The notes under the pieces: model-generated
Database searches by the model: none
What the model was told of the DNA's origin: nothing
What the model saw: only the letters and a program-made list of their open reading frames with translations
Virus record (IMG/VR): IMGVR_UViG_3300028393_000019
Coordinates: 186,001-250,000 of that record
DNA: 64,000 nucleotides
Reading direction: 5' to 3' (one strand)
Shown: in pieces, positions 41,303 to 57,183 of the stretch
How the letters are laid out: each line of letters opens with the position of its first letter
How positions within the stretch are numbered: the stretch's first letter is position 1
Position numbers and translations under genes: made by a program

Positions 41303-41303
41303 T

Positions 41304-42938: not shown

Positions 42939-42940
42939 AA

Positions 42941-43531
42941 ATGCCAAACCTAGTACCAATGGTGATCGAGCAAGAAGCTCGTGGAGAACGTAGTTATGAT
43001 ATTTACAGTCGCTTGCTCAAGGACCGTATTGTTATGCTGGACACAGATGTTAATGAACATTCGGCAAGTTTGCTGGTAGCACAGCTACTATTTTTGGAGA
43101 GTCAAGGAAATGAAGACATTACTTTTTTCATCAATAGTCCTGGGGGTGTGGTTACTGCCGGCATGGCTATCTATGACACAATGCAATTTATTAAACCAGA
43201 CGTCTGTACCGTCGTTATGGGTCAGGCTTGCAGTATGGGTTCCTTGCTCGCTACTGCTGGGGCTCCTGGCAAACGCAAAATGCTTCCAAACGCTCGCCAC
43301 ATGATTCACCAGCCAAGCGGTGGTGCAGGTGGACAAGCTACAGACATGGAAATCCAAGTAAACGAAATCATTAAAATGAAAAAGAACTTGACCCAAATTT
43401 ATGTAGACCATAACAGCAAGGGCAAGACGTTTGAGCAGTTCCACTCTGCTATGGAACGTGATAACTTTATGAGTGCGCAAGAAGCACTAGATTTTGGATT
43501 AATTGACGAGATCATAACAAAACGCCCATAA
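42941..43531 (+). CDS. clpP: ATP-dependent Clp protease proteolytic subunit
   Basis: [34 protein letters not shown]; triad intact. Confidence 0.97.
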
Positions 43532-43590: not shown

Positions 43591-44316
43591 ATGGCCCAAC
43601 TACCATTCGATTGGTCGGAATTAACCCGCAGTAATCTGTACTCTATGTTCTATTCGCTCAACAGCGAAATAGTGGGCAAAGAGCTATCTCCCAGTCAAAT
43701 CCAAAAACGCATTATTCGCCACATTAAGGCGCACCTGCCTGTTAAACTCAAAAAGTGTTTGTATGCTCCTACTACACCTGGATTTGTATTCATGGGCGGA
43801 GTTTACTACAGCGATTTGGATCACAAAGGCAAGCCTGCGATTGAAGTCAATTTCAACTACAATCCAAACGATCGAAAGTTACGATTAACCAATCATCGTT
43901 TTAAACGTATGGCTATCCGATTTGCTGATGTAGTACTGCATGAAATTGTACATCAGCGCCAATTCCGTGCCCGTAACTTTAAAAACATTCCCGGATACGA
44001 AAGCACTGCCTATTATGCTACTGATCGTAAAAAGCAAGAGTACTATGGTGACAGAGACGAAATGGGCGCACATGCGTTCAATTGTGCCTGTGAATTGATT
44101 GATCGATTTGGATACGATCCTACAACAATTGGACGATACCTAGATTCAAATCAATGCCGTAGACATAAAAATTCAACTTGGAATGATTATTTGAAGTCAT
44201 TTGATTGGAATCACAATCATCCAATTATACGCAGAATGCGTAATTTGATCTTGCGCCAATTGGAAAATGCCTATTACGGCAAGCCATTTAAGACCACAAA
44301 CCACTTGACATACTAG
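43591..44316 (+). CDS. HExxH...E putative zinc metallopeptidase, paralog of 34413
   Basis: LHEIVHQRQ...YYGDRDEMGAHAF. Confidence 0.5.
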   Translation: MAQLPFDWSELTRSNLYSMFYSLNSEIVGKELSPSQIQKRIIRHIKAHLPVKLKKCLYAPTTPGFVFMGGVYYSDLDHKGKPAIEVNFNYNPNDRKLRLTNHRFKRMAIRFADVVLHEIVHQRQFRARNFKNIPGYESTAYYATDRKKQEYYGDRDEMGAHAFNCACELIDRFGYDPTTIGRYLDSNQCRRHKNSTWNDYLKSFDWNHNHPIIRRMRNLILRQLENAYYGKPFKTTNHLTY

Positions 44317-44333
44317 CAGTTAGGCTGTATAAT
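44305..44333 (+). promoter_or_regulatory. Consensus sigma70 promoter
   Basis: TTGACA-17 nt-TATAAT. Confidence 0.85.
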
Positions 44334-44366: not shown

Positions 44367-45692
44367 ATGAGCGTTTGTGCCAGTCACATTTGGGCCCTAG
44401 AAACCCATCCAAGCCGTTTAAACAAAGAAGCCATAATCCTAGCCATAGCTGAAGAAGGCAATAAAGAATTCTTTGAAGGTTGTCGTCTTGCGCTAGATCC
44501 AATGATCACTTTTGGACTCAAACAGATACCTGAGAAAACAGATGCGGATGGTGCTGGCTTACCTTGGGACAGTTTTACTCTCGCTCTTACTGGTTTTGTT
44601 ACACGTCAAGTTACTGGTAATACAGCACGTGATATGATTGCCGCCATGATGAAGTCAGCAACCAAAGCAGAATGGAATGGTTGGTATCGTAGGATTTTAA
44701 TCAAAGACTTGCGCTGTGGTGTAAGCGAAAAAACAATTAACAAAGTAGTGGAGAAGAAGTATGCTGACTATGCTATTCCTGTATTCGGTTGTCAGCTTGC
44801 TCATGATAGTGCTAATCATGAGTCGAAGGTATCGGGCAAAAAACTTATTGAAGTTAAACTCGACGGAGTTAGAGTTATTACTATTGTACGTAGTGACGGT
44901 CGGGTGGATATGTTCAGTCGCAATGGTAAAGAACTTGCTAACTTTCCTCACATAGCACAACAGATTTCAAACGTGATTCAACTCAAAGGCGCCAGCAAGA
45001 GTATGGACATTGTACTGGATGGAGAAATTATGTCCAGCAGTTTCCAAGACTTGATGAAGCAAGTACATCGCAAGGACAATGTAGAAGCGGGTGATGCTGT
45101 GCTTAACCTGTTTGATGTGGTGCCATTGGAAGATTTTGAAAAAGGCATTTACAACAAGGATCAAACTACTCGAAGTAGCATGGTCAAATTTTGGGTTGAA
45201 CAAAATCAAGACATGATGCCCAATGTGACTTATGTGGCCAATGAGCTTGTTGATTTGGACACTGAAGCAGGACAAGTTCGCTACAAAGAGATCAATGCAA
45301 AAGCGATTGCAGGCGGATACGAAGGCATCATGCTTAAGGATCCTGCCGCTGGATATGAGTGTAAACGCAGTGTTGCATGGTTGAAGCTCAAGCCATTCAT
45401 TGAAGTTAGTCTTACTGTGGTTGCCACAGAAGAAGGTACAGGTCGTAACGTAGGTAAATTAGGTGCATTAGTTTGCGAAGGAGAAGATGATGGAAAAAGT
45501 ATTAAAGTTAACGTGGGCAGTGGTTTCAGCGACAGCGACCGCGATAGTTATTGGAGTGGCCGCGATCATGTTGTCGGAACTGTTGTTGAAGTAAGGGCAG
45601 ACGCTGTAACGCAAAATCAAGACGGTACTTATTCGTTGAGATTTCCTAGATTCTTAAAATTTAGAGGATTCGAAGCGGGTGAAAAGATTTAA
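44367..45692 (+). CDS. ATP-dependent DNA ligase
   Basis: EVKLDGVR, LDGEI, EGIMLK, WLKLK, SLRFPRF. Confidence 0.95.
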   Translation: MSVCASHIWALETHPSRLNKEAIILAIAEEGNKEFFEGCRLALDPMITFGLKQIPEKTDADGAGLPWDSFTLALTGFVTRQVTGNTARDMIAAMMKSATKAEWNGWYRRILIKDLRCGVSEKTINKVVEKKYADYAIPVFGCQLAHDSANHESKVSGKKLIEVKLDGVRVITIVRSDGRVDMFSRNGKELANFPHIAQQISNVIQLKGASKSMDIVLDGEIMSSSFQDLMKQVHRKDNVEAGDAVLNLFDVVPLEDFEKGIYNKDQTTRSSMVKFWVEQNQDMMPNVTYVANELVDLDTEAGQVRYKEINAKAIAGGYEGIMLKDPAAGYECKRSVAWLKLKPFIEVSLTVVATEEGTGRNVGKLGALVCEGEDDGKSIKVNVGSGFSDSDRDSYWSGRDHVVGTVVEVRADAVTQNQDGTYSLRFPRFLKFRGFEAGEKI

Positions 45693-45936
45693 GAACACTG
45701 TACTGTTTGTTATATTAACGATACTCATTATGGCCTTGTGGCCATTCCGCAACCTGCTAAGTATTGAGGAAGATGTTCATACACGCAGATTCTGTGCTTA
45801 TGGACAGGTGTATGTAGAGTTTGAACATGCAGGTAAGACCTGGGGTACTACTTTTTTAGGTGTAAGTGGTAAACCTGTAGCATGTAATGAAAATGACACA
45901 CTATCAACACCAGCATTACACAAGGAAATTATATGA
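45679..45936 (+). CDS. Membrane-anchored hypothetical protein
   Basis: N-terminal TM segment. Confidence 0.45.
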   Translation: MKRFKNTVLFVILTILIMALWPFRNLLSIEEDVHTRRFCAYGQVYVEFEHAGKTWGTTFLGVSGKPVACNENDTLSTPALHKEII

Positions 45937-46769
45937 GATCACACTATTGGACATGTTCGAAATTTGCAGACTGGTTACGTGGCACACCAAAACCAGGAGC
46001 CCAAACCAGTGAAGGCTGGGATGAGTGGACTGAAAAAGCCAAGTCAGCACATCCTGTTCGTTGGTGGATTGCCGAAGAAGGATTAGATCACCTTCAAAAA
46101 TTTGTTTATTATATTCCGGATCGACTAAATGACATACGCTATTATATTAACAATCGCTGGGTTAGTTACAGCCATGCTCTTACCGCACATCCTCGAGACA
46201 TACAACCGGGTAACTGGAGTGATGTTGGCAATCGCTTTCTTCCTTGTATGTTCAATGAGCTTGTGGACTTTGTTGAAATAGAACAAGCATGGCATCACTG
46301 CATGTGGAGTGATGAAGCCAAAACCAAATTTGATGTGCCTTGGTGGCGCAGTGGCTGGCTACGTTTGCGTACATGGCGCAATGCCGAAGCAGGTATGGAA
46401 TATCTCAAATGGGCTAGCGAGCTTGTCGTTGGTGAAGACATGGGTGCTACTCCTGGGGACAAAGGATTCGGCGAGCCCACCTATCAAGCCAAATCCGCTA
46501 AAGAAATCATCGAGCTTTACACTTGGTGGACTGTTACATATCGCAATCGTCCTGACCCATACGAAGCAAGTGGCTGGACTGCGGCATGCGAAGCCAGTCG
46601 TTTGGCCAACGGTGGCCGACTGAGTTTCAGCGGTGAGAAAGATCCTACACTTAAAAAAGCCAGCGACAAGGCTCACAAGCTACTTCAAAAGATTGAAAAG
46701 GCTTATGAAGCAGAAGACGAAGCTATGATGATTCGCCTTATCAAAATCCGTCAGAGTCTATGGACATAA
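45933..46769 (+). CDS. Trp-rich hypothetical protein
   Basis: 278-aa ORF with SD AAGGA. Confidence 0.6.
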   Translation: MRSHYWTCSKFADWLRGTPKPGAQTSEGWDEWTEKAKSAHPVRWWIAEEGLDHLQKFVYYIPDRLNDIRYYINNRWVSYSHALTAHPRDIQPGNWSDVGNRFLPCMFNELVDFVEIEQAWHHCMWSDEAKTKFDVPWWRSGWLRLRTWRNAEAGMEYLKWASELVVGEDMGATPGDKGFGEPTYQAKSAKEIIELYTWWTVTYRNRPDPYEASGWTAACEASRLANGGRLSFSGEKDPTLKKASDKAHKLLQKIEKAYEAEDEAMMIRLIKIRQSLWT

Positions 46770-48121
46770 ACAAGTTTAGAGATGAACTTAATAGTGTCAG
46801 TCCATCATTTTGTGCCGCTAAGTGGAAGCAGGTAACGCTTCATCTCCAAACTGGGCATAACCATAGTTGCCATCATCCGGCACCTCACAAGATACCGTTA
46901 GAAGAACTGTCAGCCAATCCATCAGCGTTACACAATACCAAGTTTAAAAAACTACAACGTAAGATGATGCTGAGTGGCGAACGTCCGGCAGAGTGTGACT
47001 ACTGCTGGCGTGTTGAAGACAACAGTAACTCACTAAGTGATAGAATTTTTAAAAGTGCCGACAAGTGGGCGGCACCTCATATTCAAGACATAGCCAGTAA
47101 ACCCTGGGACCATGATGTTGTACCCAGCTACGTAGAAGTTAGCTTTGGTAATGTGTGTAATTTTAAATGCAGTTATTGTGCGCCCAATGTCAGCTCACGT
47201 TGGATGGAAGAAATTGAAAAGTTTGGACCATATCCCACATCGGGCAAGTTCAACAACCTGGAGTGGCTGAAACAAACAGATCAGATGCCCATACCACACA
47301 AGGACGACAATCCCTATGTTGATGCATTTTGGGAATGGTGGCCTACTGCTTATCGTGAGCTAGAGCATTTTCGTATCACTGGCGGTGAACCTTTACTGAA
47401 CAAAAATACATTTAAGATTCTAGATTACATAATTGCTAATCCCAATCCAAACTTGGACTTTAGTATTAATGCCAACATGTGTCCACCGAGTGACATACTA
47501 GATAAGTTTATTGAAAAGATTAAACTGTTGGAAGGCAAAGTAAAAAGATTCAAAATCTTTACTAGTGCAGAGGCATATGGCGCTCAGGCAGAGTATATAC
47601 GCAATGGTATGGACTATGCTCAATGGATCGATAATATTGAACGTGTGCTAAAAGAAGTACCAAGTGTAGGGTTTACAATCATGAGCACCTACAATGCCCT
47701 AAGCGTTCCCAGCTATACCAAATTCTTGCAAGATGTATTGAGACTCAAAACACAATATTACAAACCAGAATATAAGCAAACTGCTGTACTATTAGACATA
47801 CCGTATCTGCGGTGGCCTCCACATCAGTCAATCTTTATTCTAACAAAGGACTTTGCCACAACAATCAAAGAGCATGTGGACTTTGTGCAGTCTTATGCAG
47901 AAGGCACTGCAACAGAAACATACCAAGGATTTGATCGTCTTGAAGTCGAACGTATGAAACGAATATACGAAATATTTCAATCACACGATGAACCAGATAC
48001 TGTAAAGAATCAAAAAGACTTTGTAGCGTTTGTTGACGAGCATGATCGCAGACGTGGCACAAACTTCTCGGCTACATTTCCCGAGATGGTAAAATTTTAC
48101 AATTACTGTCAACAGCTATGA
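46760..48121 (+). CDS. Radical SAM protein with N-terminal twitch-like domain
   Basis: FCAAKW...SCHH...CDYCW, then CNFKCSYC and TGGEP. Confidence 0.9.
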   Translation: MDINKFRDELNSVSPSFCAAKWKQVTLHLQTGHNHSCHHPAPHKIPLEELSANPSALHNTKFKKLQRKMMLSGERPAECDYCWRVEDNSNSLSDRIFKSADKWAAPHIQDIASKPWDHDVVPSYVEVSFGNVCNFKCSYCAPNVSSRWMEEIEKFGPYPTSGKFNNLEWLKQTDQMPIPHKDDNPYVDAFWEWWPTAYRELEHFRITGGEPLLNKNTFKILDYIIANPNPNLDFSINANMCPPSDILDKFIEKIKLLEGKVKRFKIFTSAEAYGAQAEYIRNGMDYAQWIDNIERVLKEVPSVGFTIMSTYNALSVPSYTKFLQDVLRLKTQYYKPEYKQTAVLLDIPYLRWPPHQSIFILTKDFATTIKEHVDFVQSYAEGTATETYQGFDRLEVERMKRIYEIFQSHDEPDTVKNQKDFVAFVDEHDRRRGTNFSATFPEMVKFYNYCQQL

Positions 48122-49527
48122 AATATCAATTGCATTTTTTCTACGACTACGTATTTCCTAACTACATCTTGCCAAATGCATTGATGCCAGAATACGCTAT
48201 CTTAAATTACTTTAACAGTCAATATTCAAACAAAGACAGAGAAAATTGTTTTACAGATCCAGGTGCCAGTGATGTAACACGATCTGTCTTTAATAAAAAA
48301 TTCGGTGATTGGCCAAACAGTATTAGACACAACGGCTCGCATCTTGATAGGGGAGTATACTCTAATAAGGTACAAATAATTGAAAACTCTTTGTACCTTG
48401 GCAAGCATCAGGTCAATCGATATATCTACCCTATAAAACTAGGGCCGCATCTGCATGAATTTGTAGGAGTTAATTTAAGGCCAGGCAACAAACTAAATGG
48501 CGAATACTTTTGGAAACACATGAGTGAAGAAGCCTTACAAGATGCACAATCAAGAAGAGCTATCATATTCATAGATTATGGACAAGAGAACTTTATAGAA
48601 AAAGAAACTTATATAAATTTACATGAAGTTCTTAGATACAGCGGAATACCTAAGGAACAAGTTATCCTAGCGTTTAACACGTTCAATGGTCGAGAAGTAT
48701 ACGAATCATGGTTTAGACCCGACGAACGTAGACTAGAAGTACACAACTGGTGCTATGTAATGAGCGAAGCATCTATGTTTTACTTTGAGAACCCTAGCTT
48801 CCGTCTGAGCGTTGAGCAATTTAGAAACAGCAGATATTTTAAAAGACCAAATCATTTCTTATTTAAAATTAGAAACTCTCGAAATCATAGACTGGCTCTG
48901 CTGTATAAGATGGCCACAGATGGATTATTAAGTCAGGGAGATTGGTCTTGCTTGACTAAACTACAAGTTAATGATCGTATGCTAGATTATTATAGGAATC
49001 TTTATCAGTTTGACATAAACACTGACACAGTAAAAGAGCTATGCAATTCAACGCCGCATGTCCTACAAAGTGAAAGAGACAATCGTCATGAGCTAGTAAG
49101 CGCATGGACTGACAAAGATGCCAAGCCACATGCTGACAGTTATTTCTATATCTGCACAGAAACTTTTGTACACGGAGAGCACAAGTCACTTACTGAAAAA
49201 GTGTTTAAGCCAATTGCAAATTTCCAACCGTTTTTATTTGTAGCATATCCAGGCGCATTAGCTTTGTTAAGAAGTTTGGGATTCAAAACCTTTAGTCCGT
49301 TTATAGACGAAAGCTACGATATTGAATCTGACGAAGGTCGTCGTGTACATATGATCTATAAAGAAATTGCCAGACTATGTGCTATGACTCAAGACCAACT
49401 GCATGATTGGTATTGGCAGATGGAGTCTATATTAGAACACAATCATAATCTGTTGTTGACACTACACAAGAACGATCCTAGCAGTATTGAATTAATAAAA
49501 TATCTGCACCAACGAACCAACGAATAA
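48118..49527 (+). CDS. Putative glycosyltransferase (GT10/GT-B-like C-terminal motif)
   Basis: TET...LTEKVFKPIANFQPF...GFKTFSPFIDESYD. Confidence 0.5.
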   Translation: MKYQLHFFYDYVFPNYILPNALMPEYAILNYFNSQYSNKDRENCFTDPGASDVTRSVFNKKFGDWPNSIRHNGSHLDRGVYSNKVQIIENSLYLGKHQVNRYIYPIKLGPHLHEFVGVNLRPGNKLNGEYFWKHMSEEALQDAQSRRAIIFIDYGQENFIEKETYINLHEVLRYSGIPKEQVILAFNTFNGREVYESWFRPDERRLEVHNWCYVMSEASMFYFENPSFRLSVEQFRNSRYFKRPNHFLFKIRNSRNHRLALLYKMATDGLLSQGDWSCLTKLQVNDRMLDYYRNLYQFDINTDTVKELCNSTPHVLQSERDNRHELVSAWTDKDAKPHADSYFYICTETFVHGEHKSLTEKVFKPIANFQPFLFVAYPGALALLRSLGFKTFSPFIDESYDIESDEGRRVHMIYKEIARLCAMTQDQLHDWYWQMESILEHNHNLLLTLHKNDPSSIELIKYLHQRTNE

Positions 49528-49530
49528 ATA
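49525..49530 (+). promoter_or_regulatory. Late-type promoter motif TAAATA
   Basis: 5 nt before ATG 49536; includes the upstream TAA stop. Confidence 0.55.
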
Positions 49531-49535
49531 TTTCC

Positions 49536-50081
49536 ATGAATTACAAAGACAGTAACTGGCAAACAGTAGACACAGCATATCTAAATACCTTTGGTAAAGA
49601 AGTCCCTGTGTACTCGCCTGCTGTTTATAGAGAGTACAGGGGAGAGATATTTACTACCTATCATTCTACTGCGCACCCTGTTAACCAAATATTACCAAAC
49701 GATGTGCAAGTTCATACTAGATTTTCAAAATCATATCAAGGTGTACTGCGTGGACTACACTATGATGACAAAACTTGGAAGCTGGTTCAAGCTCTAGTCG
49801 GCGATATCTATCTAGTAGTGCTTGATGTAAGACAAGACAGCGATACATTTGGCAAATGGGAATCTTACATCATAAGTGAAAAGACCAGAGACCAAGTACT
49901 GGTACCCCCGGGATTTGCTAACGGGCACTATGCACTGACAGATTGCATTTTTCACTACAGCCTATTTTATCAAGGCGACTATGTTAATGAAAATAATCAG
50001 GGTGTAATAAAATGGAATGACCCGGCTTACAATATAGAATGGCCTACTAAAGATCCTATAATACAAGGGCGTGACAAATGA
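49536..50081 (+). CDS. rmlC: NDP-4-keto-6-deoxyhexose 3,5-epimerase (RmlC family)
   Basis: GVLRGLHY, KLVQALVG.IY.V.LDVR.DS.TFGKW, VPPGFANGH. Confidence 0.9.
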   Translation: MNYKDSNWQTVDTAYLNTFGKEVPVYSPAVYREYRGEIFTTYHSTAHPVNQILPNDVQVHTRFSKSYQGVLRGLHYDDKTWKLVQALVGDIYLVVLDVRQDSDTFGKWESYIISEKTRDQVLVPPGFANGHYALTDCIFHYSLFYQGDYVNENNQGVIKWNDPAYNIEWPTKDPIIQGRDK

Positions 50082-50707
50082 TAACTAATTTAGACCAGTA
50101 TCCCGTCGTGCGAGATATCGATCATACACCAGATAGTTTGATCAAGTTTGAAGATTCGATCATAGCTCTATGGGAAGGTGCTCGAGTTCGAGGACCTATA
50201 CACTTGTCAAACGGCAATGAACACAGTTTGATCGAAATATTTAAACGTGTTAATACAACTGATTGGGTGTTCAGTACCTGGCGCAGTCATTATCATGCAC
50301 TGCTTAAAGGCCTAGATCCTCAATGGATAACTGCAGAAATTCTCAAAGGAAAGTCAATTAGTATTTGCAATGTTGATGAAAAATTTTACAGCAGTGCCAT
50401 AGTTGGCGGAACACTGCCCGTTGCACTGGGTGTTGCTCAGCAAATCAAACGTGCAGGTTCTACAGATAAAGTATGGTGCTTTATTGGTGACATGAGTTTT
50501 GAAAGCGGTATATTCTACGAGATACACAAGTATGCTAGAAACTTTGATTTACCATTATACTTTGTAGTGGAAGACAATGCAGTATCAACATATACTCCAA
50601 CAGATACCACATGGAATGGTAAACGTAGCGTACCCCATGATGTAGTACACTACCATTACAAATCTAAGTATCCGCATTACGGCACAGGCAAATGGATAGT
50701 ATTCTAA
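50078..50707 (+). CDS. TPP-dependent dehydrogenase E1 alpha-like subunit (short)
   Basis: HLSNGNE, STWRSHYHAL, SAIVGG, GD...EDN TPP motif. Confidence 0.85.
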   Translation: MITNLDQYPVVRDIDHTPDSLIKFEDSIIALWEGARVRGPIHLSNGNEHSLIEIFKRVNTTDWVFSTWRSHYHALLKGLDPQWITAEILKGKSISICNVDEKFYSSAIVGGTLPVALGVAQQIKRAGSTDKVWCFIGDMSFESGIFYEIHKYARNFDLPLYFVVEDNAVSTYTPTDTTWNGKRSVPHDVVHYHYKSKYPHYGTGKWIVF

Positions 50708-52050
50708 AAATAGTTTATGACAATTGGTATCAATCTGTACCGCTGTCCAACGGACTTCATCCCATACTGGCCAATCATATCAAAAGTTCTATACCAAGTA
50801 TCGATTCTGTAGAAAGTACAGCTACTAGTCTAATGAATAGTGACATGTTCCCATTCAGGTGGCATAACAACTTTTTTAAATATTTTAAAAATCATGCTAT
50901 GGTTGATCCGGATCAAATTGTGGACGATGCTGATATCTACATCTACCCGATTGAAATACGCACTTCACTAAATTCACTATTTCAAGATCACTCATTTAAC
51001 ATAGGAGGAAATAGTTGTACTTACAATATCAGCGATACCATCTCCCCCAAAGTGTTAAACCATCTGCGATCTGGCAAAGTAAAACTGGTTATAAATTACA
51101 TTCATGATCCTGTCTCCAACGAAGAAGACCTACTGAAGTTTGATTCATTATTGCAATCAATAGGTATTAACGGCAAGAATGTAATAGTAGTTGCGGGAAA
51201 CGAATTCGCTGTGTCTGGTTGTAGTATAAGAGTAGTTGGTGGACCTTTGTTATTTCCTAGAGAAGATGCTGAAAGAATAACATCAAGGCCTCGACCAGGT
51301 CGACTTGGCTACATGAACGATTTTGTCAAACAGCATGAGTTGAATCCTGATAAAATACGCCCTCACAAATTCATGTGCTTCAATAGACAATTAAGTAATC
51401 GCGCACACAGAATATCACTGGCATACCTAGCATTGAAATACAATCTGCTAGATCATAATGTGTTCAGTTTCCTTGAACAGATAACTGAGCGACAGGTGCT
51501 GGACAGTTCCAGGGCGTGGAGTACCTATTACAAAGATGTAGACCTGTCAGAAATGGCTAGACAAATTGTAAAGATACTGCCTTGGGAAGTTGACACGCAT
51601 CTTTTGAGTCAGTCTGAAAAAACTAACTTTTCAACACACAACAACAAAAAAGAACTTTATCTCAACACTTATATTCATATTGTATCTGAAACAAGATTTC
51701 ACGATGGTGATAGTCCCTTTATGTCGGAAAAGACATATAGGCCTATAGCAAACTTTCAACCGTTTTTATATGTAGGTAATTATAATTCTTTGAAAGACCT
51801 GCATGAATTAGGGTTTAGAACATTTCATCCTTATATTAACGAGGAATACGATCTTGAACAAGATCCCGAATTGCGCATGGCGCTGATAGAACACGAATTA
51901 AAAAAATTAAATGATTTAACACTTGAACAAATTCACGAATTGTATTTTAGTGTAAAAGATATATTGATCCATAATCGAAACCATCTGACTACATTTATCA
52001 ATGCACAACCTTACCAAAATTTAATAAGAGACCTTCAACATGGAATTTAA
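50692..52050 (+). CDS. Putative glycosyltransferase, paralog of 48118
   Basis: SET...MSEKTYRPIANFQPF...GFRTFHPYINEEYD. Confidence 0.5.
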   Translation: MDSILKIVYDNWYQSVPLSNGLHPILANHIKSSIPSIDSVESTATSLMNSDMFPFRWHNNFFKYFKNHAMVDPDQIVDDADIYIYPIEIRTSLNSLFQDHSFNIGGNSCTYNISDTISPKVLNHLRSGKVKLVINYIHDPVSNEEDLLKFDSLLQSIGINGKNVIVVAGNEFAVSGCSIRVVGGPLLFPREDAERITSRPRPGRLGYMNDFVKQHELNPDKIRPHKFMCFNRQLSNRAHRISLAYLALKYNLLDHNVFSFLEQITERQVLDSSRAWSTYYKDVDLSEMARQIVKILPWEVDTHLLSQSEKTNFSTHNNKKELYLNTYIHIVSETRFHDGDSPFMSEKTYRPIANFQPFLYVGNYNSLKDLHELGFRTFHPYINEEYDLEQDPELRMALIEHELKKLNDLTLEQIHELYFSVKDILIHNRNHLTTFINAQPYQNLIRDLQHGI

Positions 52051-53023
52051 AAATAAAAATATAGTCGTTACAGGTGCCAACGGACTAGTGGGATTACCTG
52101 CGGTTCGCAAGTGCTTAGAAGAAGGTGCTCATGCAGTTTATGCAGTGGACATTAATATAGGAGAAGGATTGATTTCCTTAAGAGAACAATACTCTAATCT
52201 AATACTGGTAATGAAAGACCTAACATATTTGGACAACTGCGAGTCACTGTTTGAAGAACAACCGATTGATATTGTACTGCATATTGCAGGAATAAAAGGA
52301 TCGCCAGCACGTAGTAGCAAACAACCTGCAGACTACTTGTTTCCTATGTTGATGTTCAATACCAACATGATCAAGGCCGCATTTGATGCCAAGGTCGGTT
52401 GGTTTGTTTATCTTTCAAGTGTAGGTGTTTACCAACCTACAGAGATCATGCGTGAAGAAGATGTATGGGTCACTGTGCCCAGTAAGAATGATTGGTATCC
52501 GGGGTGGACCAAACGTATGGGTGAAGCTACATTAGAAAGCCTACAAGTACAGTATGGATGGGACAACTGGACTGTGATACGTCCCAGCAACATCTACGGA
52601 CTCAATGACAACTTTGCACAAGACGCTACTGTGATCAGTAGCAACGTCTGGAAGTTGTACAACGTTGAGGGCAAAGATATAGTGTGTTGGGGTAACGGCA
52701 GTGCAAGGCGTGACTTTGTGTTCGGCGATGATGTTGCACAGGCTAGTGTTGATGTGGTCAAGAAAGAAGTAAAAGATATTATCAACTTTGGTTGTGCAGA
52801 AGCCATCACTATCAAAGAAACCATTGAGACTATAGTTGACTGCTATAAAGAAATATCAGGTGAAACTAAGAACATTGTCTGGGACGAAACAAAAATGAAT
52901 GGAGATCCTGTTCGTTGTCTAAGTCCAGATCGTCAAAAGAAATACGGTATACTTCCGCAAACAACCTTGCGTGATGGTATCAAGCAGACCATCCTAGCAT
53001 ACAAACAAAGGTTAGGCCAATGA
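52040..53023 (+). CDS. Extended SDR, GDP-fucose synthase (Fcl)-like epimerase/reductase
   Basis: VTGANGLVG, RPSNIYGLNDNF, WGNGSARRDF. Confidence 0.85.
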   Translation: MEFKNKNIVVTGANGLVGLPAVRKCLEEGAHAVYAVDINIGEGLISLREQYSNLILVMKDLTYLDNCESLFEEQPIDIVLHIAGIKGSPARSSKQPADYLFPMLMFNTNMIKAAFDAKVGWFVYLSSVGVYQPTEIMREEDVWVTVPSKNDWYPGWTKRMGEATLESLQVQYGWDNWTVIRPSNIYGLNDNFAQDATVISSNVWKLYNVEGKDIVCWGNGSARRDFVFGDDVAQASVDVVKKEVKDIINFGCAEAITIKETIETIVDCYKEISGETKNIVWDETKMNGDPVRCLSPDRQKKYGILPQTTLRDGIKQTILAYKQRLGQ

Positions 53024-54012
53024 AAACTACAGATAAGATTTTGGTAACAGGGGCAAGCGGATTCATTGGCTCCAATGTGCTTCGAGTGCTGTATCAACAA
53101 GGGTTCACTAATCTACGTGCTAGCACACTACAGAGAGGCTTACGGAATGACTTTAACGGATCGGAAACTATCGAACTAGTTAAGGGTGATCTGCGTGATG
53201 CAGACTTTGCTAAATTTGTGTCGCAAGACATTGATGTGGTAATACACTGCGCGGCTAACACTAGTAATGCACTGGATACTAAGTTCAATCCGTTATTACA
53301 TGTTACTCCCAATGTTGAGATGAATAACAACATAATGGAACAAAGCTGGAAGAACAAGGTGCGTAAATTTATCTTTATCAGCACAGCAAACGTCAATGGC
53401 GACCTTGGTTCAGTGTATGCTGTAGAAGACGCCAACTTTATGAACTTGCCGCTAGTACCTGTGTACAAAGCAGTGGGTGCTATGAAACGCTTTGGCGAGA
53501 TGATGTGCGACTTCTTTAGTAATCAAATACATGATCCAATGCAGTGCGTCATTATTCGTCCAAGCAACGCATTTGGGCCCAATGACAAGTATGACTTTGA
53601 GAAATGCCATGTTACACCTGCAAACATTCGCAAAGTGGCGGACAGGCTGAATCCAATTCCTGTTTGGGGTGATGGTACAGAAATACGTGATGTGCTACAC
53701 GCAGACGACATGGCCGGAGGCATTGTGTATGTTGCAGAGCATGTGGACACCTATGATATCTACAATGTGTGCTACGGTCAAGGCTACAGCGTTAACCAAT
53801 TACTTGAGTGGATGAAAGAAGCCGACGGCAATACTAACCCAATTGAGTACGTTAACAATCGAGCACCTATGATTCCAGTTCGTCTAGTATCTAGTGAAAA
53901 GATTAATGCGCTAGGCTGGAAACCAAAGCGTGAGATTAAACAAGCACTAAAGGATACTATCGAATGGTATCGTGCGCACAAAGAACAATTTGATCCAAAT
54001 AGCAAGCCATGA
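53020..54012 (+). CDS. Extended SDR, Fcl-like epimerase/reductase
   Basis: VTGASGFIG, RPSNAFGPNDKY, WGDGTEIRD. Confidence 0.85.
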   Translation: MKTTDKILVTGASGFIGSNVLRVLYQQGFTNLRASTLQRGLRNDFNGSETIELVKGDLRDADFAKFVSQDIDVVIHCAANTSNALDTKFNPLLHVTPNVEMNNNIMEQSWKNKVRKFIFISTANVNGDLGSVYAVEDANFMNLPLVPVYKAVGAMKRFGEMMCDFFSNQIHDPMQCVIIRPSNAFGPNDKYDFEKCHVTPANIRKVADRLNPIPVWGDGTEIRDVLHADDMAGGIVYVAEHVDTYDIYNVCYGQGYSVNQLLEWMKEADGNTNPIEYVNNRAPMIPVRLVSSEKINALGWKPKREIKQALKDTIEWYRAHKEQFDPNSKP

Positions 54013-54947
54013 AGCGAGTACTAATCACAGGCGGTGCTGGCTACCTAGGCTCTACACTAGCTGAACATTTACTAACACAGGGCTACAGTGTAACTGTATT
54101 TGATAACTTGTTGTACAAACAGTTATCCTTGTTGCATCTATTTAACAGACAGGGCTTTAAATTTGTCTTAGGTGATGTTAGAGATACTAGACAACTACAG
54201 GCATTGGTTAAAGAACATGATATCATTATTCCCCTAGCCGCAATCGTGGGAATGCCTGCTTGCCGAGCCAATCCCGAACTGGCCAGAGATGTAAACTACA
54301 AGCATATAAGATACATAGTGGAAGTACTGGCCAGTGATCAAAAGCTGATCATTCCCAACACCAACAGCCAATACGGATCAAGTGACGAAATCATTACCGA
54401 AGATAGTCCATTCAAACCTTTGAGTTTATATGCCGAAACCAAATGCGATGCAGAAGATGCTGTGCTGTATCATGGCAACGGTGTTGCACTAAGACTGGCC
54501 ACAGTGTTTGGTGTCAGTCCACGTATGCGTCAAGACTTGCTGGTAAATGACTTTGTTTATAAAGCAGTTACTGATGGATACTTGGTATTGTTTGAAGCGC
54601 ACTTTAAACGCAATTACATTCATGTACAGGACATTGCCCAAACGTTTCAGTTTATAATTGAAAACTACGACCAGTGTCGAGGGCAGGCTTATAATGTAGG
54701 ATTGTCTACTGCTAACCTAAGCAAGCTGGAACTTGCAGAGTGCATTAAAAAGTATGTGCCTAAACTGGCAATCAAGCAGGACGAGTTTGCCAAAGACTTT
54801 GATCAGCGCAATTACATAGTGAGCAATGCCAAATTGGAAGCATTAGGATGGAATCCCACTTTTAGTTTAGACTACGGCATTGAACAACTAATTACAGCAT
54901 ATCAGATGACAATAGTCCACAACAACCGGAACTTTACAAACCTATGA
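54009..54947 (+). CDS. NAD-dependent epimerase/dehydratase
   Basis: ITGGAGYLG, PLAAIVG, YAETK, RLATVFGVSPRMR. Confidence 0.9.
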   Translation: MKRVLITGGAGYLGSTLAEHLLTQGYSVTVFDNLLYKQLSLLHLFNRQGFKFVLGDVRDTRQLQALVKEHDIIIPLAAIVGMPACRANPELARDVNYKHIRYIVEVLASDQKLIIPNTNSQYGSSDEIITEDSPFKPLSLYAETKCDAEDAVLYHGNGVALRLATVFGVSPRMRQDLLVNDFVYKAVTDGYLVLFEAHFKRNYIHVQDIAQTFQFIIENYDQCRGQAYNVGLSTANLSKLELAECIKKYVPKLAIKQDEFAKDFDQRNYIVSNAKLEALGWNPTFSLDYGIEQLITAYQMTIVHNNRNFTNL

Positions 54948-55390
54948 CCGAACGCAGATACCTACAGACATTTAGCGAGCTGATCGATAGATTGAGCATC
55001 GTACAGCTTAAAGAAGTATTCATTACAGATTACAAAAAAGAGTACGGTGAAGAGATCGCCGATATCGTGCATGACATACAGTTGATTATGGACCAGCATC
55101 CGGATGCCAAAGTGGATGCAGAAACTATTCGAGCCATTGTGGTGTTGGCTCAAATGAACTTGCATATTTGGCACAACGAATCAAACTACCGCAGAGGAAT
55201 CAAAGACGGCAACAATTTGGAATTGACACACGGCTTGAACGGAATCCGCAACACTAGCAAAAATATCATTCAAGAAGTTGTGGGCGGACGCAAAGACTAC
55301 AAAGTTGATTGTTTGGCTGCAGACTTCCAGGGTTGGGAAATCAGCTGGAACAAAGATGTTTCACAAGACAACAAGCCATCAGTGCCATGA
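54944..55390 (+). CDS. Helical hypothetical protein
   Basis: LIDRLSIVQLKE; coupled within the sugar operon. Confidence 0.55.
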   Translation: MTERRYLQTFSELIDRLSIVQLKEVFITDYKKEYGEEIADIVHDIQLIMDQHPDAKVDAETIRAIVVLAQMNLHIWHNESNYRRGIKDGNNLELTHGLNGIRNTSKNIIQEVVGGRKDYKVDCLAADFQGWEISWNKDVSQDNKPSVP

Positions 55391-55926
55391 CCAAACCACA
55401 AACATCAATTTACAAAGACGCTTTGACTGAAGCTATGACCTATTTGGGTGAGCAAATCGATACTGTATTCATTGGACAGCAGATTGTGTATCCGGGTAAC
55501 CCGATGAGTACTACTTTAGTAAACGTAGCCAAAGACAAGATGATCGAAGTTCCAGTAATGGAAGAAACACAAATGGGCATGAGTTTGGGCATGAGTATGA
55601 TGGGCCAAACTGTGATCAGCTTTTATCCTCGCTGGAACTTTTTGATCTGCGCGGCTAATCAATTGATCAATCATGTGGACAAGTACGAGGAAATGACTGG
55701 CAAACAAGCCAATATAATCATTCGAGTGGCCAAAGGTGCAGACGAGCCGTTGGATCCGGGTCCACAGCACAAAGCCAATTTCATTGCAGAGTTTACCAGC
55801 ATGTGTCCAAATACTCGATTTTACGATCTAAAATCTGCAGATAGCATTTTGGACACTTATAAAAATGCTTACAAAACGGGCGGAATCCACATTGTGGCAG
55901 AATACCCACAGTTATATATTGCTTGA
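55387..55926 (+). CDS. TPP enzyme E1 beta/transketolase pyrimidine-binding domain (no C-terminal domain)
   Basis: FIGQQI, PVMEETQMGMSLGMS, QLINH, GPQH; start moved to 55387. Confidence 0.8.
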   Translation: MTKPQTSIYKDALTEAMTYLGEQIDTVFIGQQIVYPGNPMSTTLVNVAKDKMIEVPVMEETQMGMSLGMSMMGQTVISFYPRWNFLICAANQLINHVDKYEEMTGKQANIIIRVAKGADEPLDPGPQHKANFIAEFTSMCPNTRFYDLKSADSILDTYKNAYKTGGIHIVAEYPQLYIA

Positions 55927-55951
55927 CATAGCATCAATTTGGTGCTATAAT
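55923..55951 (+). promoter_or_regulatory. Consensus sigma70 promoter with extended -10
   Basis: TTGACA-17 nt-TATAAT, with TGn before the -10 box. Confidence 0.85.
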
Positions 55952-55983: not shown

Positions 55984-57183
55984 TTGGCTAAAGTCGCTAC
56001 AAAACCCCGTGTTACAAAAAAGCAGGTAATTGCACATCGTACACGAGCTGTAAAAGATCACAGCCCAGTTTGGGAAGGTTGTGAGTCTTGGGACGCAGAT
56101 ACATTCCACCGCTTCTTTAAGAAGGCAATGGACTACTACCGCTTAGAAAGCGATATCAAAACTTACAAGCCCGCTGTGATTCGTTGGATGGAATCAGTTG
56201 GCTGTACTAAAGCAGACATTACAGCGTTTAAGAAAGTCAAAGATTCGCGTATTGGTACCACAATGGGTGCTGTGGCTTGCTGTTTGAATCGCGGAATGAC
56301 AGCTAATCGTGCAGACTTCAATCAAGGTCGTGACACTGCCGCTTGGTTGCGATCAGAGATTGTCAAAGTTATTGCGGCAGGCAAGCATGACGTTGATCCA
56401 GAAGAAACAAAATTGCTGGAAGCAAGCAAACCTGTAGTGATTCAACCCACTATCCAAGAGCGTGTGCGTGAAACTGCCATGAAGATGACAGAAGAAATTG
56501 AAGACGCAATTGAAGGCTTCCAAACTGACCCAGACACATTTGATCCAAAAGCATTCAAGATGCTGAACTTGCTCAAAGGCAAAGAAGTCAAAGCCGCACA
56601 TGCTAGAATCATCAAAACGTTTTATGCTCGAGATTTAGCAGAACTTGAAGAACTTGCAAGCGGTAGCAAAGATGAGCAGTTGATCGAAGGCTACAGTCAT
56701 CGTACTAAGAAGCAGATTCGTAATTTGATTGCGTTTTATCAAGAGATCATGAGTGCGTGTGACATGCTAGCGCAAGAAGCTAAAGTTAATCGTGCGCCAC
56801 GTGCTAAGAAAGCACAACCTAAAGAAAAGGTTGTGGCCAAGTTGAAGTATAAGAAGAGTGACGAGCCCATGAAGCTAGTGTCTATCAATCCTGTAGACAT
56901 CATTGGTGCTAAGGAACTTTGGATCTACAATACCAAGACTCGTAAGTTAGGCAAGTACGTGGCTAACGAGTACATGGAACTTGGAGTCAAGGGTACTACT
57001 ATTACAGGCTTCAACGAAAATACTAGCGTTTGCAAAACACTACGCAAGCCCGAAGACAAGCTAAAAGAGTTCAAAGCCGCTGGTAAGGTACAACTACGCA
57101 AGTTCTTAGAAGACATTAATGCTACAGACACTAAGATGAATGGACGCATTAACGAAGAAACTATCCTAGTTAAAGTAGCTTAA
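55984..57183 (+). CDS. Basic hypothetical protein
   Basis: 399-aa ORF, TTG start after AGGAG SD. Confidence 0.7.
   Translation: MAKVATKPRVTKKQVIAHRTRAVKDHSPVWEGCESWDADTFHRFFKKAMDYYRLESDIKTYKPAVIRWMESVGCTKADITAFKKVKDSRIGTTMGAVACCLNRGMTANRADFNQGRDTAAWLRSEIVKVIAAGKHDVDPEETKLLEASKPVVIQPTIQERVRETAMKMTEEIEDAIEGFQTDPDTFDPKAFKMLNLLKGKEVKAAHARIIKTFYARDLAELEELASGSKDEQLIEGYSHRTKKQIRNLIAFYQEIMSACDMLAQEAKVNRAPRAKKAQPKEKVVAKLKYKKSDEPMKLVSINPVDIIGAKELWIYNTKTRKLGKYVANEYMELGVKGTTITGFNENTSVCKTLRKPEDKLKEFKAAGKVQLRKFLEDINATDTKMNGRINEETILVKVA

What the first reader, a model, noticed from the sequence alone, without database searches (positions are those of the whole stretch)
46760..55926. Nucleotide-sugar cluster with split minimal TPP E1 alpha/beta: candidate branched-chain sugar for virion glycosylation
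Seen: RmlC, three extended SDRs, two GT10-like proteins, an N-twitch rSAM, and short E1 alpha (209 aa) and beta (179 aa) genes 4.7 kb apart, with no E2/E3. Two fibre genes follow. Known: TPP enzymes transfer a pyruvate-derived two-carbon unit to NDP-4-keto sugars in branched sugars (YerE for yersiniose; AviB1/B2 E1-like pair for eurekanate). Inference: the phage makes a C-branched deoxysugar and attaches it to virion proteins or host surface as a shield or receptor mask.
Basis: partly seen in the sequence, partly recalled or inferred. Interest (0 to 1): 0.65.

Follow-up and report, generated by a model that had tools for sequence, protein, structure and literature searches.

The report
Phage GDP-heptose cassette with minimal thiamine enzyme
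A freshwater jumbo phage carries a mobile ten-gene operon that reworks a host GDP-heptose- or GDP-mannose-type sugar; it includes a stripped-down two-piece thiamine enzyme that probably adds a carbon branch, and dedicated transferases, and the same uncharacterised enzyme sits in heptose gene clusters of other phages, bacteria and archaea.

Summary
Ten overlapping or abutting + strand genes (46760-55926) encode an N-twitch radical SAM enzyme, two paralogous GT-B transferases whose best structural match is GT10 fucosyltransferase, a cupin epimerase, three extended SDRs, a virus-only 148-aa protein, and short E1 alpha (209 aa) and beta (179 aa) genes 4.68 kb apart. No E2, lipoyl or E3 domain is found in the 265-kb record.

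The interpretation needs correcting. The sugar chemistry is GDP-manno-heptose-like, not deoxyhexose. SDR3 matches PDB 6vo6 (which I recall as Cj1427) at 340 bits. The cupin is closest to the C. jejuni GDP-4-keto-heptose epimerases. No SDR has dehydratase residues.

Alpha and beta are halves of one enzyme. They are fused in cyanophages S-SM2 and P-TIM68 and in archaeal and Omnitrophota loci, adjacent in the other cellular loci, and modelled to bind (0.85 against 0.02 for the best control).

The cassette is mobile: its flanks differ among 80 viral contigs. It lies between two perfect sigma-70 promoters. No sugar-activating genes are found, even in near-complete relatives.

C-branching by the thiamine enzyme is plausible by analogy but unproven. 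Virion glycosylation is untested, and the link to fibre genes is not conserved.

The parts
44305..44333 (+). Perfect sigma-70-type promoter (TTGACA-N17-TATAAT); likely start of the transcription unit that carries the DNA ligase and the sugar cassette
   Evidence: 12/12 match. There are five perfect sites in the window, all on the + strand, against 0.14 expected.
46760..48121 (+). N-twitch radical SAM enzyme (453 aa); tailoring step of unknown chemistry
   Evidence: NF033640 346 bits, cut-off 170. CxxxCxxC at residues 133-140 plus Cys18, Cys37, Cys79 and Cys82. First gene of the cassette in the commonest order; the family occurs in 49 of 80 viral loci.
48118..49527 (+). GT-B glycosyltransferase, GT10-like (469 aa)
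   Evidence: AF2 pLDDT 92, pTM 0.90. VIA-align: 2nzw Z 12.1, 1c3j Z 12.0, FUT9 Z 10.3. Invariant R258, E360, K361. hhalign to a true GT10 aligns the FucT motif, E 0.008.
49536..50081 (+). Cupin C3/C5 epimerase of a GDP-4-keto sugar (181 aa)
   Evidence: PF00908 1e-34. Best PDB matches are C. jejuni DdahB/MlghB and the GDP-4-keto-heptose epimerases, 125-132 bits, against 85 bits for dTDP RmlC.
50078..50707 (+). ThDP enzyme, PP-domain subunit (E1 alpha-like, 209 aa)
   Evidence: PF00676 6e-14, covering profile positions 6-172 of 300. GDM...EDN cofactor/Mg motif. Fused to the beta part in S-SM2 and P-TIM68.
50692..52050 (+). Second GT10-like GT-B glycosyltransferase (452 aa), paralogue of 48118-49527
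   Evidence: 33% identical over 220 aa, E 7e-28. The family has 173 members in 78 loci.
52040..53023 (+). Extended SDR1 (327 aa), GDP-fucose-synthase-like; putative ketoreductase with a non-canonical active-site motif
   Evidence: NF047922 134 bits, below cut-off. PDB: GDP-fucose synthases 76 bits and C. jejuni C4 reductases. The Tyr of YxxxK is displaced and varies as Y/H/F.
53020..54012 (+). Extended SDR2 (330 aa); reductase or epimerase of uncertain step
   Evidence: PF01370 8e-43. PDB best hits are 8rdg, 4zrm and GDP-fucose synthases. Non-canonical Y...MKR motif.
54009..54947 (+). Extended SDR3 (312 aa), Cj1427-like C4 dehydrogenase that should create the 4-keto sugar
   Evidence: PDB 6vo6/6vo8, E 6.5e-101, 340 bits over residues 2-309. 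YxxxK intact.
54944..55390 (+). 148-aa four-helix protein of unknown function, found only in viruses; its stop overlaps the beta start codon
   Evidence: Present in 40 of 80 viral loci. AF2 pLDDT 80, all-helical. Atlas look-alikes are viral hypothetical clusters only.
55387..55926 (+). ThDP enzyme, Pyr-domain subunit (E1 beta-like, 179 aa)
   Evidence: PF02779 29 bits. Activating Glu and active-site His retained in the alignment to human E1 beta. 31% identical to the C-terminal half of S-SM2 gp198. Modelled to bind alpha, ipSAE 0.85 against 0.02 for the best control.
55923..55951 (+). Perfect sigma-70-type promoter that starts the next unit; marks the 3' boundary of the cassette
   Evidence: 12/12 match with TG extension.

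Best explanation
The cassette is a horizontally mobile phage operon that takes a host-made GDP-manno-configured sugar, remodels it and transfers it. [quoted passage not shown] The operon is probably transcribed early.

Proposed steps:
1. SDR3, a close relative of C. jejuni Cj1427, oxidises C4 without 6-deoxygenation (strong homology).
2. The cupin epimerises C3 and/or C5 of the 4-keto sugar (strong homology).
3. The 209-aa and 179-aa E1-like proteins assemble into one thiamine-diphosphate enzyme made only of a PP and a Pyr domain (shown by gene fusions, gene adjacency and a complex model). This enzyme decarboxylates a 2-oxo acid, most likely pyruvate. It then adds the two-carbon unit to the C4 carbonyl, giving a 4-C-acetyl branched sugar (inferred by analogy only).
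4. SDR1 and SDR2 reduce remaining keto groups (inferred; their catalytic motifs are atypical).
5. The N-twitch radical SAM enzyme adds a further, unknown modification.
6. The two GT10-like GT-B enzymes transfer GDP-activated sugar to an acceptor.

The acceptor is unresolved. A phage or virion protein and a host envelope glycan are about equally likely, and DNA is less likely.
For: Gene content and overlaps.

GDP-heptose chemistry:
- SDR3 matches 6vo6 at 340 bits.
- The cupin is closest to DdahB, MlghB and the GDP-4-keto-heptose epimerases.
- SDR1 is closest to GDP-fucose synthase and the C. jejuni C4 reductases.
- GT10 enzymes use GDP donors, and the GT-B model matches GT10 best.
- A true GT10 gene flanks the module in locus L086.

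One enzyme from two genes:
- Alpha and beta are fused in S-SM2, P-TIM68 and in Methanosarcinales, Nanoarchaeota and Omnitrophota loci. They are adjacent in the SAR11-like and Chloroflexota loci.
- The alpha and beta families co-occur in viral loci.
- The complex model scores ipSAE 0.85 against a best control of 0.02. That mark was reached by 51 of 78 solved complexes and 2 of 108 mismatched pairs. Partner pLDDT is 90 and the runs agree.
- Cofactor motifs are retained.

Not a dehydrogenase complex: no E2, lipoyl, E3 or Transketolase_C domain.

Link between the ThDP enzyme and heptose genes across domains of life: GmhA, GHMP or PfkB kinase, nucleotidyltransferase, GT9 and the Cj1427-like SDR are neighbours.

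Precedent for E1-like pairs adding a two-carbon branch to 4-keto sugars: PMC4425429, PMC4753412.

Mobility: flanks are not conserved among 80 loci.

The host supplies the donor: no NTP_transferase or SIS domain in the own record or in 9 large relatives, two of them at least 95% complete.

Early unit: perfect promoters at 44305 and 55923.

Found in nature: freshwater metagenomes from several studies, and identical short contigs in two lake metatranscriptome runs.
Against: - No biochemical data exist for any minimal alpha/beta protein. The branching reaction rests on analogy with full-length E1 pairs (325 and 345 aa) from actinomycetes.
- That 6vo6 is Cj1427 is from my memory. The library text did not confirm the PDB code.
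- SDR1 and SDR2 lack a canonical YxxxK, so their redox role is uncertain.
- SDR3 is missing from about a quarter of the viral loci, some of which are cut by contig ends.
- In the fused-type loci the activation genes look ADP-heptose-like (PfkB plus cytidylyltransferase-like), so the nucleotide may differ between lineages.
- RNA-library contigs do not prove transcription.
- Promoter matches are consensus matches only.
Confidence: 0.5

Rival explanations
1. The cassette makes only an epimerised, unbranched GDP-heptose, as C. jejuni Cj1427/Cj1430/Cj1428 do. The ThDP enzyme then has a side role: for example handling the 2-oxo acid or its products that the ping-pong C4 dehydrogenase needs, or making an acyl or hydroxyethyl group for an O-linked decoration.
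For: The dehydrogenase, epimerase and reductase-like trio is complete without a ThDP step. Cj1427 depends on alpha-ketoglutarate. Related cassettes carry many decorating enzymes: carbamoyltransferase, 2OG oxygenases and PhyH.
Against: No known heptose pathway uses ThDP, and literature searches found none. Alpha/beta is the most conserved element of the cassette. It travels with heptose genes even where the Cj1427-like SDR is weak or absent. E1-type enzymes without E2 have no acceptor for an acyl group other than a carbonyl.
Confidence: 0.2
2. The alpha/beta protein is a minimal transketolase that raises the supply of sedoheptulose 7-phosphate for heptose synthesis.
For: It is annotated 'transketolase central region-containing protein' in S-SM2 and P-TIM68 and sits beside GmhA, a kinase and a nucleotidyltransferase. 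Weak transketolase and DXS model hits.
Against: It scores far better against E1 models (52-86 bits) than against transketolase (20 bits). The window's phage and 9 large relatives have no GmhA or nucleotidyltransferase that could use sedoheptulose 7-phosphate. In viral cassettes alpha/beta is interleaved with enzymes that act on nucleotide sugars.
Confidence: 0.07
3. One reading: the product is attached to virion proteins (fibres, capsid) as a shield or receptor mask.
For: The transferases are soluble GT-B enzymes. No flippase, polymerase or lipid-carrier priming gene is present in the cassette. Fibre-like genes lie 1.3 kb downstream. Related cassettes hold GT7 fused to ConA-like lectin domains. 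Virion glycosylation is known in mycobacteriophages (cited in PMC12619734).
Against: Fibre adjacency is seen in only 2 of 80 loci, both near-identical contigs. The fibre genes have their own promoter and one is on the other strand. The sigma-70-type promoter suggests early rather than late expression. The same module sits in cellular surface-glycan islands with Wzy_C, GT9 and GT4, which points equally to host envelope glycans. No acceptor motif was tested.
Confidence: 0.3
4. The transferases hypermodify phage DNA with the unusual sugar, to evade restriction.
For: T4 beta-glucosyltransferase ties with GT10 as the best structural match (Z 12.0), and T4 alpha-glucosyltransferase also matches (Z 9.5). 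The cassette shares its early unit with a DNA ligase. Virus-encoded transferases that build DNA glycans are known (reference cited).
Against: No thymidylate-synthase-family hydroxymethylase is found in the 265-kb record, so the usual acceptor base is not evident. The conserved Glu-Lys motif is the GT10 GDP-sugar motif. The record is incomplete, so this absence is weak evidence.
Confidence: 0.08

Closest known systems
C. jejuni capsular heptose modification enzymes: Cj1427 (MlghA) C4 dehydrogenase, Cj1430/MlghB/DdahB epimerases, Cj1428/MlghC/DdahC reductases
   Same: SDR3 matches 6vo6 at 340 bits over its full length. The cupin's best matches are these epimerases. SDR1 resembles the GDP-fucose-synthase-like reductases. 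The logic is the same: make a GDP-4-keto sugar, epimerise it, reduce it.
   Different: The phage cassette adds a ThDP enzyme, a radical SAM enzyme and GT10-like transferases. It lacks the GDP-heptose supply genes. SDR1 and SDR2 have atypical catalytic motifs.
AviB1/AviB2 (avilamycin), Pau11/Pau12 (paulomycin): E1 alpha/beta-like pairs proposed to add a pyruvate-derived two-carbon branch at C4 of a 4-keto sugar
   Same: An E1-type alpha/beta pair, with no E2 or E3 partner found in the record, encoded inside a sugar pathway next to a 4-keto-forming step.
   Different: Those subunits are full length (Pau11 325 aa, Pau12 345 aa). They act in actinomycete antibiotic pathways on deoxyhexose or pentose units, possibly after glycosyl transfer. 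Here the subunits are cut down to the PP and Pyr domains (209 and 179 aa) and the context is GDP/ADP-heptose.
YerE (yersiniose A), ThDP-dependent flavoprotein
   Same: The proposed reaction is the same: an acetyl carbanion from pyruvate added to an NDP-4-keto sugar.
   Different: By the cited description YerE is a single ThDP-dependent flavoprotein; that it is of the acetolactate-synthase type and acts on a CDP-3,6-dideoxy sugar is from my own knowledge. It is not an E1-type two-subunit enzyme. Only a weak TPP_enzyme_C hit is seen here.
Cyanophage S-SM2 gp198 and P-TIM68 'transketolase central region-containing protein'
   Same: Homologous: 40-43% identity to alpha and 31-38% to beta. Located in a phage heptose or LPS-type cluster.
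   Different: These are fused into one 381-402-aa protein with a canonical GDG motif. Their neighbours are a Zn-alcohol dehydrogenase and ADP-heptose-type activation genes. Their function is uncharacterised.
GT10 alpha1,3/4-fucosyltransferases (H. pylori FucT, human FUT9)
   Same: Best fold match. The Glu...Thr-Glu-Lys...Pro motif is shared. The implied donor is GDP-linked.
   Different: No Pfam PF00852 hit. The proteins are about 120 residues longer. The match is tied with T4 beta-glucosyltransferase. The family is much expanded in viral cassettes, with 2-5 copies per locus.

Membership tests
2-oxo acid / acetoin dehydrogenase E1 (alpha/beta type) | PP domain with ThDP/Mg motif (GDG-X26-NN) | tested here: met
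   PF00676 6e-14. The motif is present as GDM...EDN. It is GDG in the fused cyanophage homologues.
2-oxo acid / acetoin dehydrogenase E1 (alpha/beta type) | Pyr domain with cofactor-activating Glu | tested here: met
   PF02779 29 bits. The Glu aligns with the Glu of human E1 beta, and the active-site His is also kept.
2-oxo acid / acetoin dehydrogenase E1 (alpha/beta type) | Full-length subunits: alpha C-terminal region and beta Transketolase_C domain | tested here: not met
   Alpha covers only profile positions 6-172 of 300. Beta has no PF02780, and none is found anywhere in the record.
2-oxo acid / acetoin dehydrogenase E1 (alpha/beta type) | Works with E2 (lipoyl acyltransferase) and E3 | tested here: not met
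   No PF00198, PF00364 or PF02852 in the 265-kb record. The record is about 72% complete.
2-oxo acid / acetoin dehydrogenase E1 (alpha/beta type) | Alpha and beta associate | tested here: met
   Natural fusions and adjacency. Complex model 0.85 against best control 0.02. This is a prediction, not a measurement.
AviB1/AviB2-type sugar C-branching E1 pair | E1-like pair encoded in a sugar pathway together with a 4-keto-forming enzyme | tested here: met
   The Cj1427-like SDR3 is in the same operon. Precedent.
AviB1/AviB2-type sugar C-branching E1 pair | Transfers a pyruvate-derived two-carbon unit to C4 of the sugar | not testable with these tools
   Needs enzymology. No sequence signature of this activity is known.
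YerE-type ThDP flavoenzyme | Single acetolactate-synthase-like chain with TPP_enzyme_N/M/C domains | tested here: not met
   Only a weak TPP_enzyme_C hit (24 bits) on alpha. No N or M domain.
Cj1427-type GDP-heptose C4 dehydrogenase | Full-length high-scoring homology to the solved enzyme, with intact Tyr-x3-Lys | tested here: met
   6vo6, 340 bits, residues 2-309. YAETK present. That this entry is Cj1427 is from memory.
Cj1427-type GDP-heptose C4 dehydrogenase | GDP-manno-heptose as substrate, alpha-ketoglutarate as oxidant | not testable with these tools
   No heptose-activation genes in the phage or in 9 relatives. The substrate may be heptose or mannose.
dTDP-4-dehydrorhamnose 3,5-epimerase (RmlC equivalog) | Score above the TIGR01221 cut-off | tested here: not met
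   116.6 bits against a cut-off of 155.75. PDB hits favour the GDP-heptose epimerases.
GT10 fucosyltransferase | Pfam PF00852 membership | tested here: not met
   No hit even at E <= 10.
GT10 fucosyltransferase | GT-B fold closest to GT10 structures and a conserved FucT motif | tested here: inconclusive
   2nzw Z 12.1, but T4 BGT Z 12.0. The hhalign motif alignment has E 0.008 and probability 5%.
N_Twi_rSAM (NF033640) | Score above cut-off; CxxxCxxC plus N-terminal Cys cluster | tested here: met
   346 bits against 170. Cysteines seen in the translation.

The most novel reading that the evidence does not exclude
The minimal PP+Pyr thiamine enzyme defines an undescribed, widespread C-C bond-forming step on 4-keto heptose nucleotides. 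Its product would be a branched nine-carbon sugar that has never been reported. Phages move the pathway between hosts as a cassette and use it early in infection to decorate their own proteins or to repaint the infected cell's surface.
Probability: 0.3. Interest if true: 0.75.

Novelty: new variant of a known kind. Interest (0 to 1): 0.6.

Why it matters
If the minimal alpha/beta enzyme does branch a GDP-4-keto-heptose, three things follow.
- It would be the smallest known E1-type thiamine enzyme.
- It would open a new route to higher-carbon branched sugars.
- It would be a compact carboligase with a defined sugar-nucleotide acceptor, which is of interest for biocatalysis.

Ecologically the family is abundant. 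More than a hundred distinct short alpha sequences at 72-89% identity were listed from metagenomes, and 149 IMG/VR contigs carry it. It links freshwater and marine phages with surface-glycan islands of SAR11-like bacteria, Omnitrophota, Chloroflexota and archaea. This suggests phage-host traffic in cell-surface sugar chemistry, the very trait that decides phage adsorption.

It also gives a testable functional context for the uncharacterised N-twitch radical SAM family.

Tried and rejected
- Megablast of the 9.2-kb region against GenBank phages: no match.
- Pfam, NCBIfam and PHROGs on the two 450-470-aa proteins and on the 148-aa and 278-aa proteins: nothing significant. The weak DUF7164 and DUF4254 hits on the 148-aa protein led nowhere.
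- Atlas feature and fold searches for the 148-aa protein: only viral hypothetical clusters.
- Giant-virus reading: considered because of Bax1-I, ClpP and an ATP-dependent ligase. No NCLDV capsid hit, though that control was silent. Tailed-phage PHROG and jumbo-phage protein matches favour a phage.
- Gp23 capsid search: uninformative, control silent.
- The radical SAM gene beside the fused enzyme in the Methanosarcinales locus is unrelated to the N-twitch family. No conserved rSAM-ThDP partnership can therefore be claimed.
- BLASTP of the GT-like protein against a true GT10: not significant.
- Literature searches for ThDP in heptose pathways, N-twitch rSAM function, or this cassette in jumbo phages: nothing found. 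I could not tell whether the 'moraphage' lineage paper concerns this phage.
- The papers that would confirm the PDB code of Cj1427 are not held.
- The 278-aa and 85-aa ORFs upstream (45679-46769) occur only in the closest contigs, so I do not count them as part of the cassette.
- The large representative-protein search was not used. The word search, viral-contig scan and genome scan answered the question of relatives.
- Read laying was given 5,849 letters.

Full report
**Setting.** The window is bases 186001-250000 of a 265,680-bp linear IMG/VR virus record that CheckV rates about 72% complete. The stretch occurs in freshwater metagenomes from several independent studies. Single proteins resemble those of jumbo myoviruses such as Pseudomonas phage PA5oct and Ralstonia phage RsoM2USA. 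Tailed-phage structural PHROGs hit the genes just downstream. I therefore treat it as a freshwater jumbo phage. Its host is unknown.

**The observation.** From 46760 to 55926 there are ten + strand genes whose ends overlap or abut. Pfam and NCBIfam identify them as follows:
- an N-twitch radical SAM protein (346 bits, cut-off 170);
- an RmlC-type cupin;
- an E1_dh protein of 209 aa that covers only the first 172 of 300 profile positions;
- three extended SDRs;
- a Transket_pyr-only protein.

The beta gene starts at the ATG at 55387, which overlaps the stop of the preceding 148-aa ORF as ATGA. The two proteins of 469 and 452 aa have no family hit but are paralogues. Alpha ends 4,680 bp before beta begins. 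No E2, lipoyl, E3 dimerisation or Transketolase_C domain is found in the whole record.

**What the sugar enzymes resemble.** Searching solved structures by sequence was the most informative step.
- SDR3 matches PDB 6vo6/6vo8 with E 6.5e-101 and 340 bits over residues 2-309. From memory this entry is Cj1427 of Campylobacter jejuni. [quoted passage not shown] The activity is described in PMC10680097 and PMC7949155. I could not confirm the PDB code from held text.
- The cupin's eight best matches (125-132 bits) are the C. jejuni GDP-4-keto-heptose C3 and C3/C5 epimerases. They include DdahB (7ANI) and MlghB (7ANG), as PMC7949155 confirms. dTDP RmlC enzymes score about 85 bits, and the protein falls below the rmlC equivalog cut-off.
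- SDR1 is nearest to GDP-fucose synthases and the C. jejuni C4 reductases.
- SDR2 is less specific.
- None of the three SDRs has the acid pair of 4,6-dehydratases, and all score far below the dehydratase cut-offs.

The chemistry is therefore that of GDP-manno-heptose (or GDP-mannose) oxidised at C4 without 6-deoxygenation. It is not a dTDP or CDP deoxyhexose pathway.

**The transferases.** I aligned 45 homologues from viral contigs. The 469-aa protein then folded with pLDDT 92 and pTM 0.90.
- Foldseek places it among GT-B glycosyltransferases.
- VIA-align ranks H. pylori alpha1,3-fucosyltransferase (GT10) first, Z 12.1 with 275 residues aligned. T4 beta-glucosyltransferase ties at Z 12.0. Human FUT9 follows at Z 10.3.
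- The invariant residues R258, E360 and K361 lie in a Glu...Thr-Glu-Lys...Pro stretch. A profile comparison with a Pfam-certified GT10 from locus L086 aligns exactly this stretch, but weakly: E 0.008, probability 5%.

'GT10-like GT-B' is a fair description. Membership of GT10 is not shown. The family is much expanded in viral cassettes, with 173 members in 78 loci.

**The thiamine enzyme.** Alpha keeps the cofactor/Mg motif as GDM...EDN, which is GDG in cyanophage homologues. Beta keeps the cofactor-activating Glu and an active-site His when aligned with human E1 beta. Several results show that the two genes make one enzyme.
- In cyanophages S-SM2 and P-TIM68 the homologues are one fused protein of 402 and 381 aa.
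- In cellular assemblies beta is always immediately downstream of alpha or fused to it. This holds for SAR11-like single-cell genomes, Chloroflexota, Omnitrophota, Nanoarchaeota and a 969-kb Methanosarcinales contig.
- In 80 IMG/VR loci beta accompanies alpha wherever the contig is long enough to show it.
- A complex model gives ipSAE 0.85 against a best control of 0.02. That mark was reached by 51 of 78 solved complexes and 2 of 108 mismatched pairs. Partner pLDDT is 90 and the three runs agree. Because E1 complexes have been solved, this shows likeness rather than proof.

The 4.7-kb separation is not special. In viral cassettes the alpha-beta distance ranges from 2 bp to 9.3 kb, as GT and SDR genes have been inserted between the two. 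The commonest order is rSAM-GT-cupin-alpha-GT-SDR1-SDR2-SDR3-u148-beta.

**What travels with it.** The flanking ligase and fibre genes are found only in near-identical contigs, whereas the cassette core is shared at 62-100% alpha identity. The cassette is therefore mobile.
- Related cassettes add a carbamoyltransferase, 2OG-Fe(II) and PhyH oxygenases, and GT7 fused to ConA-like lectin domains.
- In cellular loci the neighbours are heptose and surface-glycan genes:
  - L086 has GmhA, a GHMP kinase, Wzy_C, a Gmd-like dehydratase, DegT, NeuB and a true GT10.
  - Four loci have a Cj1427-like SDR at 45-47% identity.
  - The Methanosarcinales locus has a PfkB kinase, a cytidylyltransferase-like protein, GT9 heptosyltransferase and GT4.
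- S-SM2 and P-TIM68 place the fused gene among GmhA, kinase and nucleotidyltransferase genes, next to a Zn-alcohol dehydrogenase.

The association of this minimal enzyme with heptose nucleotide metabolism thus holds across phages, bacteria and archaea. I found no paper that describes it.

**Supply and timing.**
- Neither the own record nor nine large relatives contain an NTP_transferase or SIS (GmhA) domain. Two of those relatives are at least 95% complete, at 238 and 180 kb. The donor sugar nucleotide must therefore come from the host.
- The window has five perfect TTGACA-N17-TATAAT sites, all on the + strand, against 0.14 expected. One is at 44305, upstream of the DNA ligase. One is at 55923, right after beta. 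None lies between them. I infer a single, probably early, host-polymerase-driven unit.
- Two lake metatranscriptome runs from different studies hold 100%-identical short contigs over alpha, the second GT, SDR1-3 and the u148/beta junction. This is compatible with expression but does not prove it.

**Mechanism, with the status of each step.**
- Strong homology: C4 oxidation by SDR3 and C3/C5 epimerisation by the cupin.
- Shown by comparative genomics and modelling: alpha and beta form one enzyme, and no dehydrogenase-complex partner was found in the (incomplete) record.
- Inferred by analogy only: the enzyme decarboxylates pyruvate and adds the two-carbon unit to the C4 carbonyl. This is what is proposed for AviB1/B2 and Pau11/12, and what was reported for the unrelated YerE, cited in the held papers (PMC4425429, PMC4753412).
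- Uncertain: the roles of SDR1 and SDR2. Their Tyr-x3-Lys motif is replaced by DW[YHF]P[GSA]W[TSA]KR in SDR1 and PVY..VG.MKR in SDR2.
- Unknown: the radical SAM step and the 148-aa helical protein.
- Fold-level inference: transfer by the GT-B enzymes from a GDP donor.
- Open: the acceptor.
  - For proteins: the transferases are soluble and there is no lipid-carrier machinery.
  - For host envelope glycans: the cellular homologues sit in surface-glycan islands and the promoter looks early.
  - For DNA: the T4 glucosyltransferase likeness and the shared unit with the ligase. Against DNA: no hydroxymethylase gene is found.

**Verdict.** The finding is real and more interesting than a routine LPS gene cluster, but it needs re-reading. 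It is a GDP-heptose-type remodelling cassette carrying a domain-minimal E1-type thiamine enzyme. That enzyme has fused and adjacent forms which are widespread and uncharacterised.
- The branched-sugar idea is the best available hypothesis, at about even odds.
- 'Deoxysugar' is not supported.
- 'Virion glycosylation' is one of several open targets.
- I rate it a new variant of a known kind, with interest 0.6.

Noticed in passing
window 6864-13313 and 28006-32960: An unusual density of radical SAM genes. There are two more N-twitch paralogues: 6864-8168 (+), 334 bits, and 10817-12229 (-), 378 bits. Four other rSAMs lie at 9834-10820 (-), 12222-13313 (-), 29922-31082 (+, with an HMPTM zinc ribbon) and 32004-32960 (-). 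A B12-binding rSAM at 28006-29922 resembles KedN5-type C-methyltransferases.
   Followed up: partly
window 23300-24868 (+) and 26822-27976 (-): A tryptophan-halogenase-family flavoprotein (PF04820, 3e-93) and a class-III aminotransferase sit in a phage genome between the rSAM genes. This could be a second small-molecule or modification pathway.
   Followed up: no
window 32960, 39703, 41412, 44305, 55923 (+): Five perfect TTGACA-N17-TATAAT promoters, all on the + strand, against 0.14 expected by chance. They mark a block of host-polymerase (early-type) transcription units.
   Followed up: partly
window 40604-43531, 61048-62772: Cell-like accessory genes: a Bax1-inhibitor family membrane protein, a redoxin, a ClpP protease, a QueD-like 6-pyruvoyl-tetrahydropterin synthase (a hint of 7-deazaguanine metabolism) and a UvdE UV endonuclease.
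   Followed up: no
window 32995-33090 (+): A 96-nt tRNA-Pro (anticodon GGG) called by ARAGORN. It is unusually long for a tRNA and lies just downstream of a perfect promoter.
   Followed up: no
window 52040-54012 and homologues in L003-L083: SDR1 and SDR2 form a subfamily that lacks the canonical Tyr-x3-Lys. They share a W/M-x-K-R-x-x-E motif instead. They are the genes most often inserted between alpha and beta.
   Followed up: partly
L086 (alphaproteobacterial single-cell contig, 89.8 kb), L085, L088, L089, L091: Marine Pelagibacteraceae-labelled single-cell assemblies carry adjacent alpha and beta at 49-58% alpha identity. In L085 and L086 they are joined by SDR1-3 homologues. L086 sits in a surface-glycan island with Wzy_C, NeuB, DegT, a Gmd-like gene and GT10.
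   Followed up: partly
L083:17669-19153; L078:3734-5371; L032:14286-14990; L070:17039-17812; L036:686-2122: Related viral cassettes carry extra tailoring genes that this window lacks: a carbamoyltransferase (20 loci), a 2OG-Fe(II) oxygenase (19), a PhyH dioxygenase (15), GT7 fused to a ConA-like lectin domain (11), and two unknown families of about 300 aa (48 and 32 loci).
   Followed up: partly
window 55984-57183 (+): A 399-aa protein of unknown function (phrog_11903). It is conserved in PA5oct-like jumbo phages, Caulobacter Cr30, Sinorhizobium phiM/phiN phages and a Synechococcus phage.
   Followed up: no
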